Positions 43,901-52,000 of a stretch of 64,000 bases of DNA are shown here, one piece after another (positions within the stretch are counted from its first letter, which is position 1; the number at the start of each line of letters is the position of its first letter). The notes beneath the pieces were generated by a model. It was not told where the DNA came from and ran no database searches. It saw only the letters and a list, made by a program, of their open reading frames with translations. The DNA is from Cyanophora paradoxa CCMP329 (lineage: Eukaryota > Plantae > Glaucophyta): contig QPMI01000231.1 of NCBI GenBank assembly GCA_004431415.1, positions 1 to 64,000 on the forward strand, in the 5' to 3' direction. The translations under genes and the position numbers were made by a program.

Positions 43901-46215
43901 GATCTCGTATGCCCCGCGCGCCCTCAAGCGGGGCCGCTCGGTCTCCGACATCGCCTCCGGCTCCGACCCTCGGAACTCCTTTTCGCTGCGCCCCCCTACT
44001 CGTGACTCGTCCTATTCCTTCAAACTGCGGTAAAGAAATTATTTTCGTGGCGCGGCCTCTTCCTGCTGCGGCCGCCGACGACGGCTGCGGTTCGTAGCCC
44101 CGGCAAGGGCGCCCGCCAGCGCGACGACTCCGTCGTGGTGCGCCCCCCCCCCCCCCCCTTCGCCCTCGGGCCCCGGCCCCGGCCGAGCGGGCGGCAGCTG
44201 TTCATCGTCGTGACCGACGAGTCTGGGGCGGCCTCGCGGGAGGTCATCACCTTCGCGGCGCCGCGTGACCCGACCGGCCCCGAGCTCGCCGGCGAGCTGC
44301 AGGCGTCGACGGGCGAGCTCCAGGAGTTCCTCAACGCGACGAGCAGCGGCAATGCCACCGACACCGAGCTCGAGGACAACGCCGAGGTCGTCTCCCAGCT
44401 CGTCAACACCCTCAACGTCCGCCCTCCCGCCCCCCGCCCGCCGCGCGCCCGCCGAGCGGCGCGCAGACCGAGCCAAGCGGGGACCTCGAGCGGAACATCA
44501 CCGCCGCCACCACCGCGAACGTGACGACGGAGAGCGGCCTGCCGGCGCTCAACACGACCGACGCCGGCAACGCGACGGCGCCGGCCTCGCGGCGGCGCCA
44601 CGCCAAGGCCTGGTGGGGCTCCCCCCGCCGCCGCCGCCAGCTGCGCCAGGTCTCTTCCAGCGAGACCGCCGCCGCCGCGAGCACCGCCCTCAAGGCCCAG
44701 GCGCGCCCGCCCCGCCCCGCGTCGCCCCGGTCCGCCGAGCGCGGCGCAGACGGCCATCCTCAAGGGCAGCAGCACCCTCACCAACGACCTCCTCAGCACC
44801 GCCTCAAACACCTACGCCACCTCGGTCCGCCCGCCCCGCCCCGCTTCGCGCCCCGGGCTCCGGCGACCAAACCAGCGGGGGCGGGGGGCAGCTCCAGTCG
44901 GTGGCCCTCTCGGTGACGAACGCGGCGCTGACGAGCGCGTCGGACGCGACCGACCTCCTTAGCCAGGCGCGCCCAGGCGCCGGGGCGGGGCGGGGCGGGG
45001 CGGGGCGTGACGGGGCGGGCAGATGGCGACCTCGCTCGGCTCCCTCGACGACACCGAGAAGGACCGCATCTGCGCGACCAACACCTTCTTCGACCAGGCG
45101 CCGCCCCCCGCCCGCCCCCGCCGCCCCCGGCGGTGGGCCGAGCGGGGCGCGCAGGTGGTCCTCGGGACGGGCTTCCTGGCGCAGGGGGCCCCCGCGTACC
45201 GCGCCCTCGACTTCAACGGCGCCCTCACCAGCGTCAAGCGCGTCCTCGAGTCCGCCCCGCCCACCCCGCCGCGCCGCCCCGCCCCCGGCCCACGGCCCCG
45301 CAGCTTCTACTCCGCCAACTGCGCCATCACGGGCGCGGCGGCGAGCGTCTTCCCGGCCTCGGAGTCGCTGATCAGCGGGGTCCCCTCGAACATGAAGGCG
45401 GCCGTGCAGCGCGTGACGCGCACCGCCCTCCAGGCGTCCGGTGCAGCGACCGACTCGGTTATCGCCGCCTCGGCGGCCGGCTCGATCACGTGCCCGGGCT
45501 CGAGCTTCCGCCTGCCCTCCCTCGCGAGCGTCACCGGCTTCACGGGCGACGAGGCGACCATCGTGCACCTCCACCTCTGCCGCGCCACCTACCTCCCCGA
45601 GACCCGCGTCTCCAAGTCGTGCGCCCGCCGCGCCCCGCCCCCCCCCCCCGCCCGCCCCCGCCCGCCCCGCCCCGCCCCGCCCCGCCCCGCCCCGCCCCGC
45701 CCGCTCTGACGCCCCGCAGGGTCCCCGCCGGCGCCCCGGTCGCTGCCCTCGAGGTCAGGAATGCGGACGGGTCGGTGGTGCCGGTGCGGGCGCCGGGTGG
45801 CGGGGCGGGCGTCGGGGGCGGGGGCCGACGGCTCGGCGCAGGTCTCGGGCCTCACCGCCACGCCCATCACCATCGCCTTCACCAGTGCCGGTTCCGGCGC
45901 CGCCACCGGTGCGCTCCGCCCCGTCGCCTTGCCGGCCGCGGGGCCGAGGCCGGCGCAGAGAAGCTGGCGCTGCGCTCGTCGGCGGACGGGGGCGCCTCGT
46001 GGTCGGAGGTCGGCTTCGCGGGCGTCACGCGCGACGGCACCACGCTCTCCGGCACCTCCACGCACCTCACCCTCTTCGCCTTCGTCGATCTCACGACGCT
46101 CTCGAGCTTGGCGAATTTCATTCCGGGGGCCCTGCTCGGCGCCGCCCCCGCCCTGGGCCCTGCCCTCGTCACCCTCCTCGCTGCGCTCGCTGCCACCCTC
46201 GTGACCGCCTTCTGA
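38681..46215 (+). CDS. Large secreted/surface protein: signal peptide, filamin-like Ig repeat, PKD/REJ-like region, GPS/GAIN motif, hydrophobic C-terminus
   Basis: MK|VRFWTALAVLAALVALAAAA signal; GSFLVHINVSGQPIAGSPFAVTV (filamin-like); GVYLISVTVTRDGESASASQQIRV and YLYYWS..SLTFPPGTF (REJ-like); WSEVG...STHLTLFAFV (GPS); GPI-like tail; dozens of short exons. Confidence 0.75.
40790..41010 (+). repeat. Intronic low-complexity tract: poly-C, (CA)n and (CCCCAA)n
   Basis: Directly visible; lies inside a ~310-nt intron. Confidence 0.9.
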
Positions 46216-46824
46216 ACCGGCCGCCGAGGCGCAAAATAAAGCTGGCCGTGCTTGCACGGCCCGCCAGCTTTCGTTTTCCGTGCGCTTTAAGCTTTTAGTT
46301 AGTTGTAAAGTTCGCGGTAATTCATGCTCCAGTTCATTTCGGAACATCAGGATCCGGACGAAGCGATGCCTCCTGATCCCGGGTCCCCCTGATCATGAGC
46401 GATGCCGCGCGCGGGCGGGGCGATGTCTATAAAGCATATCTTACGACGGTCCTCAGTGGTATCTAGTCGGGGAGACATATTGGGCGATGTGGAACTCATG
46501 ATCATGGTAGTTGTACATGTGTTGCCAAGTTGTGTGCTAATGCAAGATCTGGAGATACACCGGGCGATGTCTAGCTGGTAGAAGCCTTGAAGCTCGTCGA
46601 GTCGAGATCGACTCGAGAGCTCGCTGCAATTTTAATTTCGAATTCAAGCTCGAGCTAAAGGTGAGCGCATGTCAGCTCAGTTCCGGACCAGGAGGCGCTC
46701 TAGATCTCGTCCCGGGATCCGGATGATCGGCCATCGCATCGCTGGACCTAGACGGCAGGCGTGCACGAGACTCGAAGGCATGTGCTTTGCGACACTGGAG
46801 CGCAGAGGAGAGATTGGGGCGGGC

Positions 46825-48723
46825 CTACTCGGGGCGGGAGCGCATGTGGCTGGCCTCCGCCTCGAGCTCCTGCAGGGGAGTGAGGCGGGTCGGGGCGCGC
46901 GGGGGGCGCGGGGCACCTCGACCGTGTCCCACGCCACGCGCGCCTCCTTCGAGGTCGCCCCGAACTTCGCCGTGGCCTGCGGGGGCGTCGGGGCGACGCG
47001 GGGCCGCCGCGGTGGGCGAGCGGGGCACCTCGCGGGCGCTCTCGATGGCGGCCTGCACCTTGACGGCCACCTCCCGGTCCTTCCTGCGCCCCGCGTCGCG
47101 CCCCGCCCCGCCCAGCCCTGCCCCGCCCGCCAACCCCTCGCGCACGCGTTCTCCGCCCGCTGGTACGGCTCCGCTTTCTCGGCCTTGAAGGCTGCGGGGC
47201 GTGGGCGGGGGCGCCGCGGGCGGCCGGCGCGGCGGCGCGCACTCTCGGAGACCTTGACGGCGGAGAGGCGCTGGTGGCCGGCCTCCGCCTCCAGCTCCTG
47301 CGCCGCGGCCCGTTGGCGGCGCCTGGCGGGGCGGGCGGGGAAGGGGGGCGGCGCGCCTCGAACGCGTCCCAGGCGGCGGCGGCCTCCTTGGAGCGCGGGC
47401 CGAATTTATTCGTCGCCTCCTGCGCCCGCGCCCGCGCCCGCTCGATCTTCCCCGCCACCATCTCCGACACCCTGCGCGCCGTCATCCGCCGCCCGCCGCC
47501 GGGCCCGCCGCCGGCCCCGCCCCGCGCACTCGTTCTGGGCCATGTCCGTGGCGGCGGCTGCGGGCGAATAAGGGCGGTGCAGGCTTCATGGCAGGCATGG
47601 GGCGCTACCGGAGGGGTTGAAGTCGCCGAAGAAGGTGCCCTTGTCGAGCCGCTCCTGCCGCCCCGCCCCTCAGCGCCCCGCTCGCGAACGCCCGCCTGCA
47701 GGCGCGCGACCTCCCCGCGGACCTTCATCTCCGTCGACTCGCGGGGCCCGGAGCCCATGAAAGGCTGGAAGGTCGCGGCCTCCGCTGCGCGTACCCTCAG
47801 AGCGGCCGAAAGAGAAAGGAAAAGAAATCCAGCGCACGGGCGGCGGCCTGGACCGAAGCCTTGGCGGCGCTCTTGATGTGAGAGAGCTCGGCCTCGAGCT
47901 CCTGCGCGGGGGCGTCGGGCGGGATGCGACCACCGGAGCGCGGCGGCTCGGCACCTCGACGTCGTCCCACGCGACGCGCGCCTCCTTCGACGTGGCGCCG
48001 AACTTCGCGGACGCTTCCCGGGCCTTGGTGAGGGCCTCCTGGATGCGCTCGCCGAGGGACGCCACCGCCGCGTCGTCCAGCTGGATCGGCGTCGACTTGC
48101 GGTTCGCGTAGGTCGGGACCTGCAGCGTCGACTCCCCGCCAGTCGGCTTGCCATCACGACCCTTCGCGTGCGCGACCTCAGCCTCGAGCTCCTGCCGCAC
48201 TTCCGCGTGAGCGGGACAAGTGCGCACATGCGCGAATCGGCCAGGCCGGAAAGCGAGGCAGGGGGCCATCGGAACGAACCTCAACAGCGTCCCAGGCACT
48301 GGCGGCTTCCTTGGAGCTGGCACCGAACTGCTTGGTCGCCGAGCGCGCCTTCAGGATCTCCTCCTCCAGGCGCCTCTGGGCGTCTCTGCATAACCGCAGG
48401 GGCAAAGCCGACGTCAGCATGGCTAGGTAATTCAACACGTAAAGACGCGAAAGACGAAGGCGGACGCACTCGAGCGACGCACAGACGCCGAAAACGATCC
48501 GTGCACGCGCAACTGCCATCGGCAGATTAGAGACGGGGGGCAGCCTGGAGACTGTAGCAACCGGCCGCGAACCATTCTGTGCCGAGAAACGGGCCGGCTT
48601 CACGCCCACGAAGGCATTGCGGATTTTCGCCTTCGCGGCTTGCGCGCGCACGACGCCAGACTGTGCCGCCGGCGAAGGGCGGGGCAGCGCCGCGGGAACA
48701 GTGACTACGAACGACGCAGACAT
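46825..48723 (-). CDS. Plastid-targeted protein with four tandem CP12-like modules
   Basis: Transit-peptide-like MSASFVVTVPAALPRPSPAAQ...; modules AWDAVE|ELEAEVAH, AWDDVE|ELEAELSH, AWDAFE|ELEAEAGH, AWDTVE|ELEAEASH; TAG 46825. Confidence 0.85.
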
Positions 48724-49051
48724 AGTTGTGCGTGTGTCGCTCGTTGAACGCTTGTGTGATCGATGGGGGGGTACTCCCAGAAGCCGCTCTCTGTGCGGCA
48801 GTGCGCGCGACCTACTACGTACACACTGGAAGCCTAGGCGGGAGCGATGTGAGGAGCGAACGTCGACTGTAGAAGCCGACTTCGGGATGCCCTAGGCCTC
48901 ACCGTCGGACGTCTACGTGCCCCGCCGTCAGGGTCGACTCGGCGACGTCGACGTCGACCCGCTAATAGGGCCGCTATAGGCATAAACTATGAACTCCGCT
49001 GCGCTCGATCCGATGGGCAGTGTGCAGAATTCGAGACTAGTACGCGCGACG

Positions 49052-52000
49052 CTAGCTGGGGGATGCGGAGGGGTGCTTTGGTGCGGAGGAGGGGACGAGT
49101 GGCCGGTCGACGACGCGAATCTTGAGGTTGATAAAGGGCCGGGGCGCCGGCGCGCCTGGCGCGCCGGCGCCACTCGCCGATGGGCCGCCCCCTGGGAGCT
49201 GGGACGGCACCTGCCGAGCGCGTCAACCAGGGGCGCGTGGCCAGGGAGGGCGGGGGCGTGCTCGCCTTCGCGGCGGGCTGCGCCTGGGCGCCCCCTCCAA
49301 GGCCCGATCCATGGGCAGGGCCTGCAGGAGGCGCGGCGTGGAGGGCGTGGCCCGGAGGCGGGCGGGCGGCATGAGAGGGCGCAGGGCGAGCGGTGGGGGC
49401 AGAGGAGGACGGGAGCAGGGTCTGGGTGTTGCCCGGGGGTTTCCCGGGCACGGCGTCGGGCGGCTGTGGGCCACGCTCCCGCTTCTTGCGCCTCGCCTGC
49501 GGGGCATCCGAGGCCACGGGAGCCGACGCTGCGGCCTCCTGGCGGAGCCCGTCGGGCGGCTCTGCTGCCGGCCCTGCCGCACCCGGACCAGCCGGAGAGG
49601 GGCGGGACGATGGCGACGCGGCCGCCGCTGCTGATCCGTCAGCTGTCGCCTGGGCACCAGCGCACTTCGAGGTGCTGTTCGCAGGGGTTGCGGCGCCGCT
49701 GGCGAGGGGTGGGGCTGACGGCGGCGGGGCGGGTTGGTTCGATGACGCGGCGTCTGTTGGGAGGGGAGGGGGGGGAGGCGACGGAAGCGAAGACGCGCTC
49801 GGGCCAGCACAGCCCGGTGCTGGCGCGGGCTCGTCCAGCACGGGCGCCGGCGCCGGCTCCTCCCGCTTTCCCGAGGGACCCTCCTTCACTGCGATCGAGG
49901 GGCGGGGGGTGAGGCGCGCGAGGGTCGCCGGCGCCGGCAGCGCACGGATGACCCCGCGGTTTAGACTTGAGAGGCAGCGGACCCTGCCGGTGACCTGCAA
50001 GCGGGTGAGGGGCGCGGCAATGGGGCCGGGGCGGGCGCACCCGCTGCTGGCCCTCGTCCCACACGCGCCGGCACAGGTACACCGCGTCCCGCGCCCTGCC
50101 GCCCCTCAGCAGGGGGCGGGGCGGGAGGGGGCGGGGGGGAGGACTTCTTCTCGGTGAGGGCGGCCGGGGGCCGGGGCTGGGCGACGAGGTCGGGCTCGAG
50201 GGCGAGGCGGCGCTCCTTGTAGGCCCTCCAGTACTGCCGCCCCGAGCGAGCTCCCGCGTCAGCACGAAGGAGCCCCTCGACGAGGCGTCAGGGGCGAGCC
50301 GGGAGCGGGCCGCACCGGGACCGTCAGCACCGCCGCCCGGCCTGCGCGCGCGCTCAGCGAGGGCGGAGAGGGCGGGTGGGAGGGCGCGCCGATGACCGCC
50401 CCCAGGGGCTGCGTCTCCACGTGCGGCTCCCCGTCGATCATGCCTGCGGGTGCGGTGAGACGGGGCGGAGAGGCGCCGCTCCAGAGGACCGCCGGGGAGG
50501 GACCTTCCCAGATCTCGCCGCGGGTGAGGGGGCGCGGCTGCTCCTCGGGGGCGACGTCGACGTGCTCGCGGCTGTAGAACCAGGCGACCTCGACGCGGCC
50601 CTCGTCGTGCCGCCCCGCCGGCTGCGCCGCCCCCGCCTCAGCCCCGCGCGCCGCCGCGCGCCGGGGGACGGCACCATGAGGATGCGGACGACGCGGGCGA
50701 CCCAGAGGGCCGTCCCGCCCTCCGCCGCCATCCGCACGCAGTCGTTCACGGCGAAGCGCGACTCGCCCAGCTGCACCGCATCGTAGCTCTCCGTCCCGTC
50801 CTCCAGCCGCCCCAGGAGCCCGATGGGCAGCACCGGCCGCGAGTCGACCTCCGCCTCCCACGCAACCGCCCCCCGCACCGCCCCGCCACGCTTCGCCCGC
50901 CGCCTGATCACGCTCCCCGCCGAAGACGCCGACGCCGCCGACGAGACCCGGCTCTCGTCCGAGTCGCTCCCCCCTGCGCCGCCGTCAGCCCATCACCCGC
51001 TGGCGCACGCCTTGAGAGAGCAGCACCTGGCTCTCCCGACGGGCCCAGCGACGTGTCCCCTGCCAACAGATTCGGAGCCCTCCGAGAAGCTAAGCTGCTT
51101 TTGGCGCCGCGCGAACCCGCAGGGGCGCGGCCGGGGCCCCCGCCCCGACCCCGCCCTCTCCCCCGGCCCCGGCCCCGGCCCCGGCCCTGGCCCCGGCCCG
51201 GGCCCCGAACTCGAACTCCGATGGCGCCCGCCTCCGACTGAGCGACATCCGCCGGCTCCGACGCTTGCCCCGACAGACTCCCCGTCGCCTGATCCGGGTC
51301 CGTCGACGCTTCGCCGACACGGGATCTCTTGCTGGCTCCAATCCTTTCCGTGACTGGCTCTCCGTCCGCGGCTTCCGCGGTTCGCTTCCAGGCCAATGCG
51401 CCGCGCGCTGCACCGCGTCCCGATCCACGGCCGCTGCCACCACGACCTCGCCCGCGACCCGCGCGCCCCCGAGTCTCGACACCAGGGCCAGACTCTGCTG
51501 GTGGCGCGGGAGCAGCCTCGTGGGGCGCGGCGGCGGCGGCCGCATCGCCTGCTACGGCTGCAGACTCCCGGGCCACCTCGCGCGGCGTGGGGCCCGAGGA
51601 GCGCGCGCCCCGACCGCGCCCTCGGGCGCGCGGGCCGCGAGCTGCCCGGCTCCTGCCGCGGCCGCCTCTCGACGATCGATCCGTCTCTGGCTTGCTGTCG
51701 GTGCTGCTCGCAGCGCCACGCGCCGCTGCACCCCCGCCTCGACTGGAGCTCGCTGTCCGGCCCCGCCCGCGGCCTCGAGAGCCGCGAGCTCCGCGCGCCG
51801 TCGCCCAGCTGGCTTCTCCAGCGCTTTTGGGCGCCGCGGCGATTGCGGGGGAGGTGCTGGATGGGGCTGCCGAGCCGGAACTACCGTCAGCCACCTCAGG
51901 CGACGCCTGCCCTGCCCGTGCGCCTCGTCCTCGGCTGGAAGATCCTGCCCTGCCCCGTCCGCCTCTGCGACCGCCTCGAAGCCCGCGTTGAGTGCCGTGC

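What the first reader, a model, noticed from the sequence alone, without database searches (positions are those of the whole stretch)
46825..48723. Tetra-CP12: four PRK-binding modules without the canonical Cys pairs in one plastid-targeted protein
Seen: four helical-hairpin repeats (..A[R/Q]xA[T/S]xxFGxxSKEAxxAWDx[V/F]EELEAExxH) separated by low-complexity linkers, behind a transit-peptide-like N-terminus. Neither the N-terminal Cys pair nor the C-terminal CxxxPxxxEC tail is present. Knowledge: canonical CP12 is a single ~80-aa redox switch; its AWDxVEEL helix binds phosphoribulokinase and its C-terminal disulfide tail binds GAPDH. Inference: a redox-independent, multivalent PRK ligand that could cross-link PRK oligomers into assemblies or condensates, analogous to the repeat linkers of Rubisco condensates. 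This would be a new Calvin-cycle control layer.
Basis: partly seen in the sequence, partly recalled or inferred. Interest (0 to 1): 0.8.

Follow-up and report, generated by a model that had tools for sequence, protein, structure and literature searches.

The report
Four-module CP12 protein of glaucophyte plastids
Glaucophyte algae make a plastid protein with four copies of the part of CP12 that plugs the Calvin-cycle enzyme phosphoribulokinase (PRK) but none of its redox switches; it probably binds and protects or dampens PRK, although no binding has been measured.

Summary
Observation confirmed. Window 48723-46825 (minus strand) is a spliced 14-exon gene, identical to Cyanophora paradoxa model tig00000980_g6140. 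It encodes 370 aa: a Phe-type transit peptide and four CP12 N-terminal hairpins (PF02672 x4), with no Cys in the mature chain and no GAPDH-binding tail. Four-module orthologues with nearly the same spacing occur in Cyanoptyche and Gloeochaete. A published cyanelle proteome lists it as 'hypothetical', at about 0.5-0.7 chains per PRK subunit. A separate four-module, tail-less family with diatom-type targeting peptides arose independently (p-AU 0.003).

Best reading (0.55): an avidity-driven, GAPDH-independent PRK binder that stabilises or dampens PRK. A condensate like Rubisco's is unlikely: PRK has two sites, the hairpin blocks the active site, and a network would need 78-100% occupancy. Binding is untested. 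New variant of a known kind.

The parts
46825..48723 (-). Tetra-CP12 gene, 14 coding exons: 48723-48573, 48512-48470, 48385-48280, 48191-47955, 47901-47838, 47784-47723, 47654-47609, 47557-47530, 47471-47357, 47297-47243, 47191-47146, 47083-47029, 46976-46917, 46869-46825; 370 aa
46503..48779 (-). Extent of the transcript seen in RNA-like contigs (about 55 nt 5' and 320 nt 3' of the coding region; contigs do not show true ends)
   Evidence: table 8
48475..48723 (-). Cyanelle transit peptide, about residues 1-62: Phe at position 5, rich in Ala/Val/Ser/Arg, holds the only Cys (C61); exact cleavage site not known
   Evidence: Phe rule in PMC4510345; protein in the cyanelle proteome
48162..48384 (-). 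CP12 hairpin module 1 (aa 66-110, W96)
47872..48059 (-). CP12 hairpin module 2 (aa 145-189, W175); closest to the ordinary Cyanophora CP12 (69% identity)
47631..47645 (-). Short motif DKGxF in the long middle linker, invariant in three glaucophyte genera
47268..47461 (-). CP12 hairpin module 3 (aa 250-294, W280)
46840..47073 (-). CP12 hairpin module 4 (aa 322-366, W352); the protein ends 4 residues later, with no GAPDH-binding tail
47298..47356 (-). GC-AG intron; one of four phase-0 introns at the same codon (W+5) in every module (the others: 48192-48279, 47902-47954, 46870-46916), a mark of duplication within the gene

Best explanation
A nucleus-encoded plastid protein of glaucophytes, made by duplicating the N-terminal hairpin of the glaucophyte CP12 within one gene and dropping the GAPDH-binding tail. 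Shown: gene, splicing, four hairpin modules, conservation in three genera, presence in purified cyanelles. Inferred: each acidic WDxxEE...H helix docks in the basic active-site cleft of PRK, as in solved CP12-PRK complexes. One hairpin binds too weakly to hold PRK without GAPDH, so four hairpins on flexible linkers supply the avidity instead. The conserved 2+2 spacing (short, long, short) suggests two hairpins per PRK dimer. The likely effect is reversible, substrate-competed binding that stabilises PRK and dampens it independently of GAPDH and NAD(H), while the ordinary tailed CP12 keeps the dark GAPDH-CP12-PRK switch. Any redox control would come from PRK's own disulfides, not from the ligand.
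For: PF02672 x4, N-terminal half only. Predicted hairpins have pLDDT 85-93 and match solved CP12 hairpins at 0.6 A rmsd (5npl, 6gfo). W, D, E, E, H are kept in all 4 Cyanophora and all 4 Cyanoptyche modules and in 3 of 4 Gloeochaete modules; these are the residues needed for PRK contact (PMC6800369) and for PRK protection, which does not need the N-terminal Cys (PMC8910624). CP12 and PRK form no stable binary complex and avidity stabilises the ternary one. Cys-free hairpins bind PRK in Galdieria and S. elongatus. W-to-W spacings are 79/105/72, 79/107/72 and 68/108/74. Both halves are quantified in cyanelles and not depleted by a Triton wash: 8.6 and 10.4 against PRK 18.8 and 13.9. An ordinary tailed CP12 coexists in the genome.
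Against: No binding data for this protein and no complex prediction (the folding tool takes monomers only). With 2-3 modules per PRK site, tight binding would shut PRK off in the light, so binding must be weak or regulated, which is not shown. The diatom multi-motif CP12 has never been isolated with PRK and is not co-regulated with it. The conserved DKGxF motif is not explained by PRK binding. Gloeochaete module 2 is degenerate.
Confidence: 0.55

Rival explanations
1. One reading: the four modules cross-link PRK dimers into networks or condensates. If so, this would be an inactive dark or stress store of PRK, not a catalytic compartment like the pyrenoid.
For: Four folded stickers on disordered spacers of 30-63 aa. 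A 4x2 system can percolate in principle, and the abundances are within reach. The glaucophyte plastid has a membrane-less Rubisco body (PMC6704402).
Against: PRK has only two sites. A network needs 78-100% of PRK active sites occupied at the published ratios (an ideal upper-bound model on rough abundances). Single-site affinity is weak. Binding of two modules to one dimer would use up valence. The linkers are not low-complexity. No paper on PRK condensates was found.
Confidence: 0.15
2. The modules serve another partner or a general role (chaperone, metal or anion buffer, scaffold), as suggested for the stress-induced diatom CP12; the DKGxF motif anchors the protein to something else in the plastid.
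For: CP12s have several roles, and diatom CP12 is decoupled from PRK. DKGxF is invariant in an otherwise divergent linker and has no match in the feature search. The independent four-module family has diatom-type targeting, and no ternary complex is known in diatoms.
Against: What is conserved is exactly the PRK-contact face. The glaucophyte modules group with glaucophyte, red-algal and cyanobacterial CP12 hairpins, for which PRK binding is shown.
Confidence: 0.22
3. A polyprotein cut into single tail-less CP12 units after import.
For: Plastid polyproteins exist in some algae (own knowledge). The two halves were quantified under separate old gene models.
Against: The three linkers share no repeated cleavage motif, and their lengths are conserved position by position. 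The split models come from the fragmented first assembly.
Confidence: 0.05
4. Gene-model artefact: neighbouring single-module genes fused by prediction.
For: No single RNA contig spans the whole gene; the contigs break at 47964-47993.
Against: The two contigs overlap by 30 nt at a stretch shared with the ordinary CP12 transcript (loose ends). The frame is continuous. Orthologues from two other genera carry all four modules in one ORF of transcriptome origin.
Confidence: 0.02

Closest known systems
Ordinary glaucophyte and red-algal CP12 (C. paradoxa tig00020554_g10879/g10880; Galdieria, Pyropia, Cyanidium)
   Same: Same Cys-free hairpin and AWDxVEELEAE..H core; 42-69% identity to the four modules; plastid-targeted.
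   Different: One module plus the CxxxPxxxxC tail that binds GAPDH. The tetra protein has four modules, no tail and no Cys.
Diatom tp-CP12 (Thalassiosira pseudonana; PMC7992989, PMC12591572; PDB 9a9r)
   Same: Several Cys-free hairpins; four per dimer, proposed to bind PRK whatever the redox state, with local concentration making up for weak affinity. Top Foldseek row (E 0.05).
   Different: Two motifs per chain, a coiled-coil dimer and a C-terminal Cys pair. The glaucophyte protein has four modules in one chain, disordered linkers and no Cys.
Cyanobacterial CBS-CP12, including the CBS-CP12-0 and truncated forms (PMC6142219; PDB 5nmu, 5npl)
   Same: Multivalent display of the CP12 N-terminal hairpin; lowers PRK activity without a GAPDH ternary complex; coexists with ordinary CP12.
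   Different: Valence comes from hexamer formation and control from AMP-binding CBS domains; the tetra protein has no sensor domain.
Unnamed four-module, tail-less CP12 family with diatom-type bipartite targeting (P0004, P0040, P0041, P0042)
   Same: Four Cys-free hairpins, no GAPDH tail, 290-300 aa.
   Different: Even spacing of about 70 aa, a C-terminal HHxxxGSG, no DKGxF; one clade with the glaucophyte modules is rejected (p-AU 0.003). Seen mostly in environmental assemblies; one two-module relative is labelled Bacillariaceae.
Rubisco condensate linkers (EPYC1 and similar; own knowledge)
   Same: Repeated binding helices on disordered spacers.
   Different: No sequence relation. They bind an eight-site enzyme away from its active sites; here the presumed target has two sites and is bound in the active site.

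Membership tests
CP12 (PF02672) | Pfam CP12 match above the curated cut-off | tested here: met
   144 bits, 4 stretches; each module 42-49 bits against a cut-off of 22.7
CP12 (PF02672) | AWDxVEEL core with W, D, E, E and H(+12) | tested here: met
   all four modules; module 3 has F in place of V
CP12 (PF02672) | Two-helix N-terminal hairpin | tested here: met
   predicted only: pLDDT 85-93, 0.6 A rmsd to 5npl and 6gfo hairpins
Canonical CP12 | N-terminal Cys pair | tested here: not met
   Ser/Thr and Ala at those sites; also absent in ordinary glaucophyte and red-algal CP12
Canonical CP12 | C-terminal CxxxPxxxxC tail that binds GAPDH | tested here: not met
   no Cys in the mature chain of three orthologues; the protein ends 2-4 residues after module 4
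Canonical CP12 | Single module of about 80 aa | tested here: not met
   four modules, about 308 aa mature
CP12 (PF02672) | Plastid location | tested here: met
   Phe-type transit peptide; both halves in the cyanelle proteome of PMC4510345 Table S2; published data, not a new experiment
CP12 (PF02672) | Binds or inhibits PRK | not testable with these tools
   inferred from residue conservation only
Canonical CP12 | Forms the GAPDH-CP12-PRK ternary complex | not testable with these tools
   predicted not to, since the tail is absent
Diatom tp-CP12 type | Two motifs per chain, central coiled coil, C-terminal Cys pair | tested here: not met
   four motifs, no Cys, low-confidence linkers; dimer state not testable
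Diatom-type four-module family | Common origin of the modules | tested here: not met
   AU test rejects one clade, p 0.003 (only 45 columns, degenerate Gloeochaete module 2 left out)
CBS-CP12 | CBS domain pair (PF00571) | tested here: not met
   no CBS hit
Condensate linker (EPYC1-like) | Repeated binding motifs on disordered spacers | tested here: met
   (disorder predicted)
Condensate linker (EPYC1-like) | High-valence target bound outside its active site | tested here: not met
   if the target is PRK: a dimer whose cleft is plugged by the hairpin (PMC6800369); occupancy estimate
Condensate linker (EPYC1-like) | Phase separation with its target | not testable with these tools
   needs in vitro mixing or imaging

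The most novel reading that the evidence does not exclude
Glaucophytes, and independently diatoms, use a single-chain tetravalent CP12 to gather PRK dimers into inactive, protected assemblies or condensates, controlled by substrate level or by PRK's own disulfides rather than by CP12 disulfides and GAPDH, with the DKGxF motif tethering the assembly to a plastid structure. This would be a second, GAPDH-independent control of the Calvin cycle that evolved twice.
Probability: 0.15. Interest if true: 0.8.

Novelty: new variant of a known kind. Interest (0 to 1): 0.52.

Why it matters
It separates the two jobs of CP12. A natural, stable, Cys-free and tail-less multimer allows a direct test of whether CP12 controls or protects PRK without GAPDH and without its own redox switch, a role so far inferred from mutants and from the diatom dimer. 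It is conserved in all three glaucophyte genera that gave hits and is about as abundant as PRK, so it may be a standing part of glaucophyte Calvin-cycle control. The independent four-module family with diatom-type targeting suggests that four hairpins have been selected more than once. If no PRK binding is found, it would point to an unknown partner of the CP12 core.

Tried and rejected
The first Pfam call failed on an 18-aa exon and was repeated with the stored protein. A green-algal origin, my first guess, was dropped after the database label. Shape search in the Atlas gave only generic helical matches, TM 0.33 or less; whole-chain Foldseek gave nothing at E 0.001 or better because the modules have no fixed arrangement (pTM 0.25). 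The feature search for the DKGxF linker was blank. An Atlas cluster of 287 aa (CP12 100%, score 0.87, taxon known for 9 of 52 members, commonest Chlorophyta) could not be resolved: it may be the diatom-type family or a further one. The module tree cannot order the duplications: most glaucophyte forks are open, and their monophyly is neither shown nor rejected (p-AU 0.22). Expression data were not obtained: no supplements held for Knopp 2020, and the Ferrari 2019 files are truncated and use other ids. Literature searches for tandem or glaucophyte multi-module CP12 found no description; most subscription papers are not in the library. Minor joints and inserts seen in only one or two runs (47339-47416; 47441-47654) were not followed and are probably other G+C-rich transcripts. 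The ordinary CP12 was not found in the proteome table; this may reflect the old gene set and was not used as evidence. Earlier scan notes had nothing on CP12.

Full report
Gene. The window starts with a CCCTAA telomere and is G+C- and intron-rich. The feature is on the minus strand. Contigs of four RNA-like runs from four studies (RNA is the tool's guess, but the contigs lack the introns) show twelve joints between 48573 and 46868; eleven are GT-AG and one is GC-AG. A thirteenth intron (47084-47145) falls in a skipped repeat; with it, spliced lengths equal the contig lengths exactly, 668 and 584. The 14 exons give an open frame of 370 aa. No single contig spans the gene: the two main contigs overlap by 30 nt at 47964-47993, where the loose ends read as the ordinary CP12 transcript, which shares that stretch. 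Method note: the exons were joined only inside a script, to check the frame. The first search used exon 4 by genomic reference, and all later work used the stored protein it returned, P0001, which equals the frame check.

Identity. P0001 is Cyanophora paradoxa tig00000980_g6140.t1, a glaucophyte protein. The N-terminus has Phe at position 5, the mark of cyanelle transit peptides (PMC4510345). The same paper's quantitative cyanelle proteome lists both halves under old, broken gene models as 'hypothetical protein': 37902_cds:7800 (average 8.6) and 16151_cds:4946 (10.4), neither depleted by a Triton wash. The two PRK fragments are at 18.8 and 13.9, GapA at 65 and RbcL at 96. So the protein is made, is in the plastid fraction and is about half to two-thirds as abundant as PRK subunits. 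These values are rough.

Anatomy. Four PF02672 stretches cover only profile positions about 2-46 of 70. The best PDB sequence matches are cyanobacterial CP12 and CBS-CP12. AlphaFold2 on a three-sequence alignment gives four confident helical hairpins, linkers under pLDDT 50 and pTM 0.25: beads on a string. A hairpin superposes on solved CP12 hairpins at 0.6 A over 43-45 residues. The former Cys sites hold Ser/Thr and Ala, the mature chain has no Cys, and it ends four residues after module 4. All four modules carry a phase-0 intron at the same codon, and three have a phase-2 intron 31-34 codons before the Trp; module DNA identity is 58-68%. This points to old duplication within the gene. Linker entropy equals that of a globular control, so 'low-complexity' is not supported.

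Relatives. Four-module orthologues exist in Cyanoptyche gloeocystis (369 aa, 41%) and Gloeochaete wittrockiana (362 aa, 36-39%; module 2 degenerate). W-to-W spacings are 79/105/72, 79/107/72 and 68/108/74 although the linker sequences have diverged, and the long middle linker keeps an invariant DKGxF. Cyanophora also encodes ordinary CP12 (P0029, P0032) with the same Cys-free hairpin plus the CxxxPxxxxC tail, as reviews state (PMC9406205); Pyropia, Galdieria and Cyanidium CP12s look the same. So only the tail loss and the repetition are special. A module profile against 1.84 billion representatives found 799 proteins. Among the best 150, four modules occur only in the three glaucophyte proteins and in P0004, P0040 and P0041 (P0042 is a three-module exon with a further module just upstream). 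These have diatom-type bipartite targeting peptides, no Cys tail and a HHxxxGSG end. More than a hundred two-module proteins of the diatom type follow. In a module tree the glaucophyte modules fall with red-algal, cyanobacterial and ordinary Cyanophora CP12; the diatom-type four-module set is separated by a 99/97 branch, and a joint clade is rejected (p-AU 0.003; 45 columns only, bootstrap not fully settled). Two independent expansions to four modules are the simplest reading. The profile favours Cys-free hairpins, so more divergent repeats could have been missed.

Mechanism. In the solved ternary complex the CP12 hairpin plugs the PRK active-site cleft through the acidic core; CP12 and PRK alone form no stable pair, and avidity stabilises the whole (PMC6800369). 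[quoted passage not shown] All five residues are kept in 11 of 12 glaucophyte modules. I infer that four hairpins replace GAPDH as the source of avidity. With 2-3 modules per PRK site, binding cannot be tight and constant, so a weak, substrate-competed stabiliser or brake is most likely (0.55). Cyanophora PRK keeps both regulatory Cys pairs (sequences), so redox control through PRK remains possible; 'redox-independent' describes the ligand only. Cross-linking is possible for a 4x2 system, but an ideal network needs 78-100% of PRK sites filled, that is, PRK nearly fully blocked. A condensate would therefore be a store of inactive enzyme, unlike Rubisco condensates (0.15). A different partner (0.22), a polyprotein (0.05) and a model artefact (0.02) are the other rivals.

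Comparison and novelty. It works like the CP12 N-terminal domain made multivalent, and it is a CP12-domain protein, but it fails three defining features of canonical CP12. The idea of four Cys-free hairpins binding PRK whatever the redox state was published in 2025 for the T. pseudonana dimer, as a hypothesis without binding data (PMC12591572). CBS-CP12 hexamers are shown to lower PRK activity without GAPDH, and tail-less variants are known (PMC6142219). I found no description of a single-chain four-module CP12, in glaucophytes or elsewhere; UniRef calls the Cyanoptyche protein only 'CP12 domain-containing'. The library lacks most subscription journals. Verdict: real, expressed, conserved and apparently undescribed; a new variant of a known kind, with function inferred and not shown. 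Interest 0.52.

Noticed in passing
window 1-7109: Telomeric (CCCTAA)n array of about 7 kb: the window is a chromosome end, and the gene lies about 40 kb from it.
   Followed up: partly
window 47962-47993: About 30 nt of module 2 appear identical to the ordinary CP12 transcript, synonymous sites included (contig break and loose ends), while module 4 with the same amino acids differs at synonymous sites. Possible gene conversion between the ordinary CP12 and module 2; codon bias could also explain it.
   Followed up: partly
window 47298-47356: GC-AG intron supported in all four runs, at the position where the other three modules have GT-AG introns.
   Followed up: yes
proteins P0004, P0040, P0041, P0042 (loci L001-L006); P0045, P0046, P0048: Apparently undescribed family of tail-less two- and four-module CP12 proteins with diatom-type targeting peptides and a C-terminal HHxxxGSG, distinct from the characterised T. 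pseudonana CP12.
   Followed up: partly
P0029, P0032: C. paradoxa has two adjacent, near-identical ordinary CP12 gene models (tig00020554_g10879 and g10880).
   Followed up: no
P0005, P0008, P0009, P0010: Cyanobacterial CBS-CP12 proteins with Cys-free hairpins and one Cys left in the tail have cores very close to the glaucophyte modules.
   Followed up: no
P0101: Two-module diatom-type CP12 with a C-terminal extension that looks like EF-hand repeats (by eye, not scanned): a possible calcium-sensing CP12 fusion.
   Followed up: no
window 46200-46342 and 49024-49200: Neighbouring genes are transcribed; the upstream-numbered neighbour's contig ends only about 160 nt from the tetra-CP12 3' end.
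   Followed up: no
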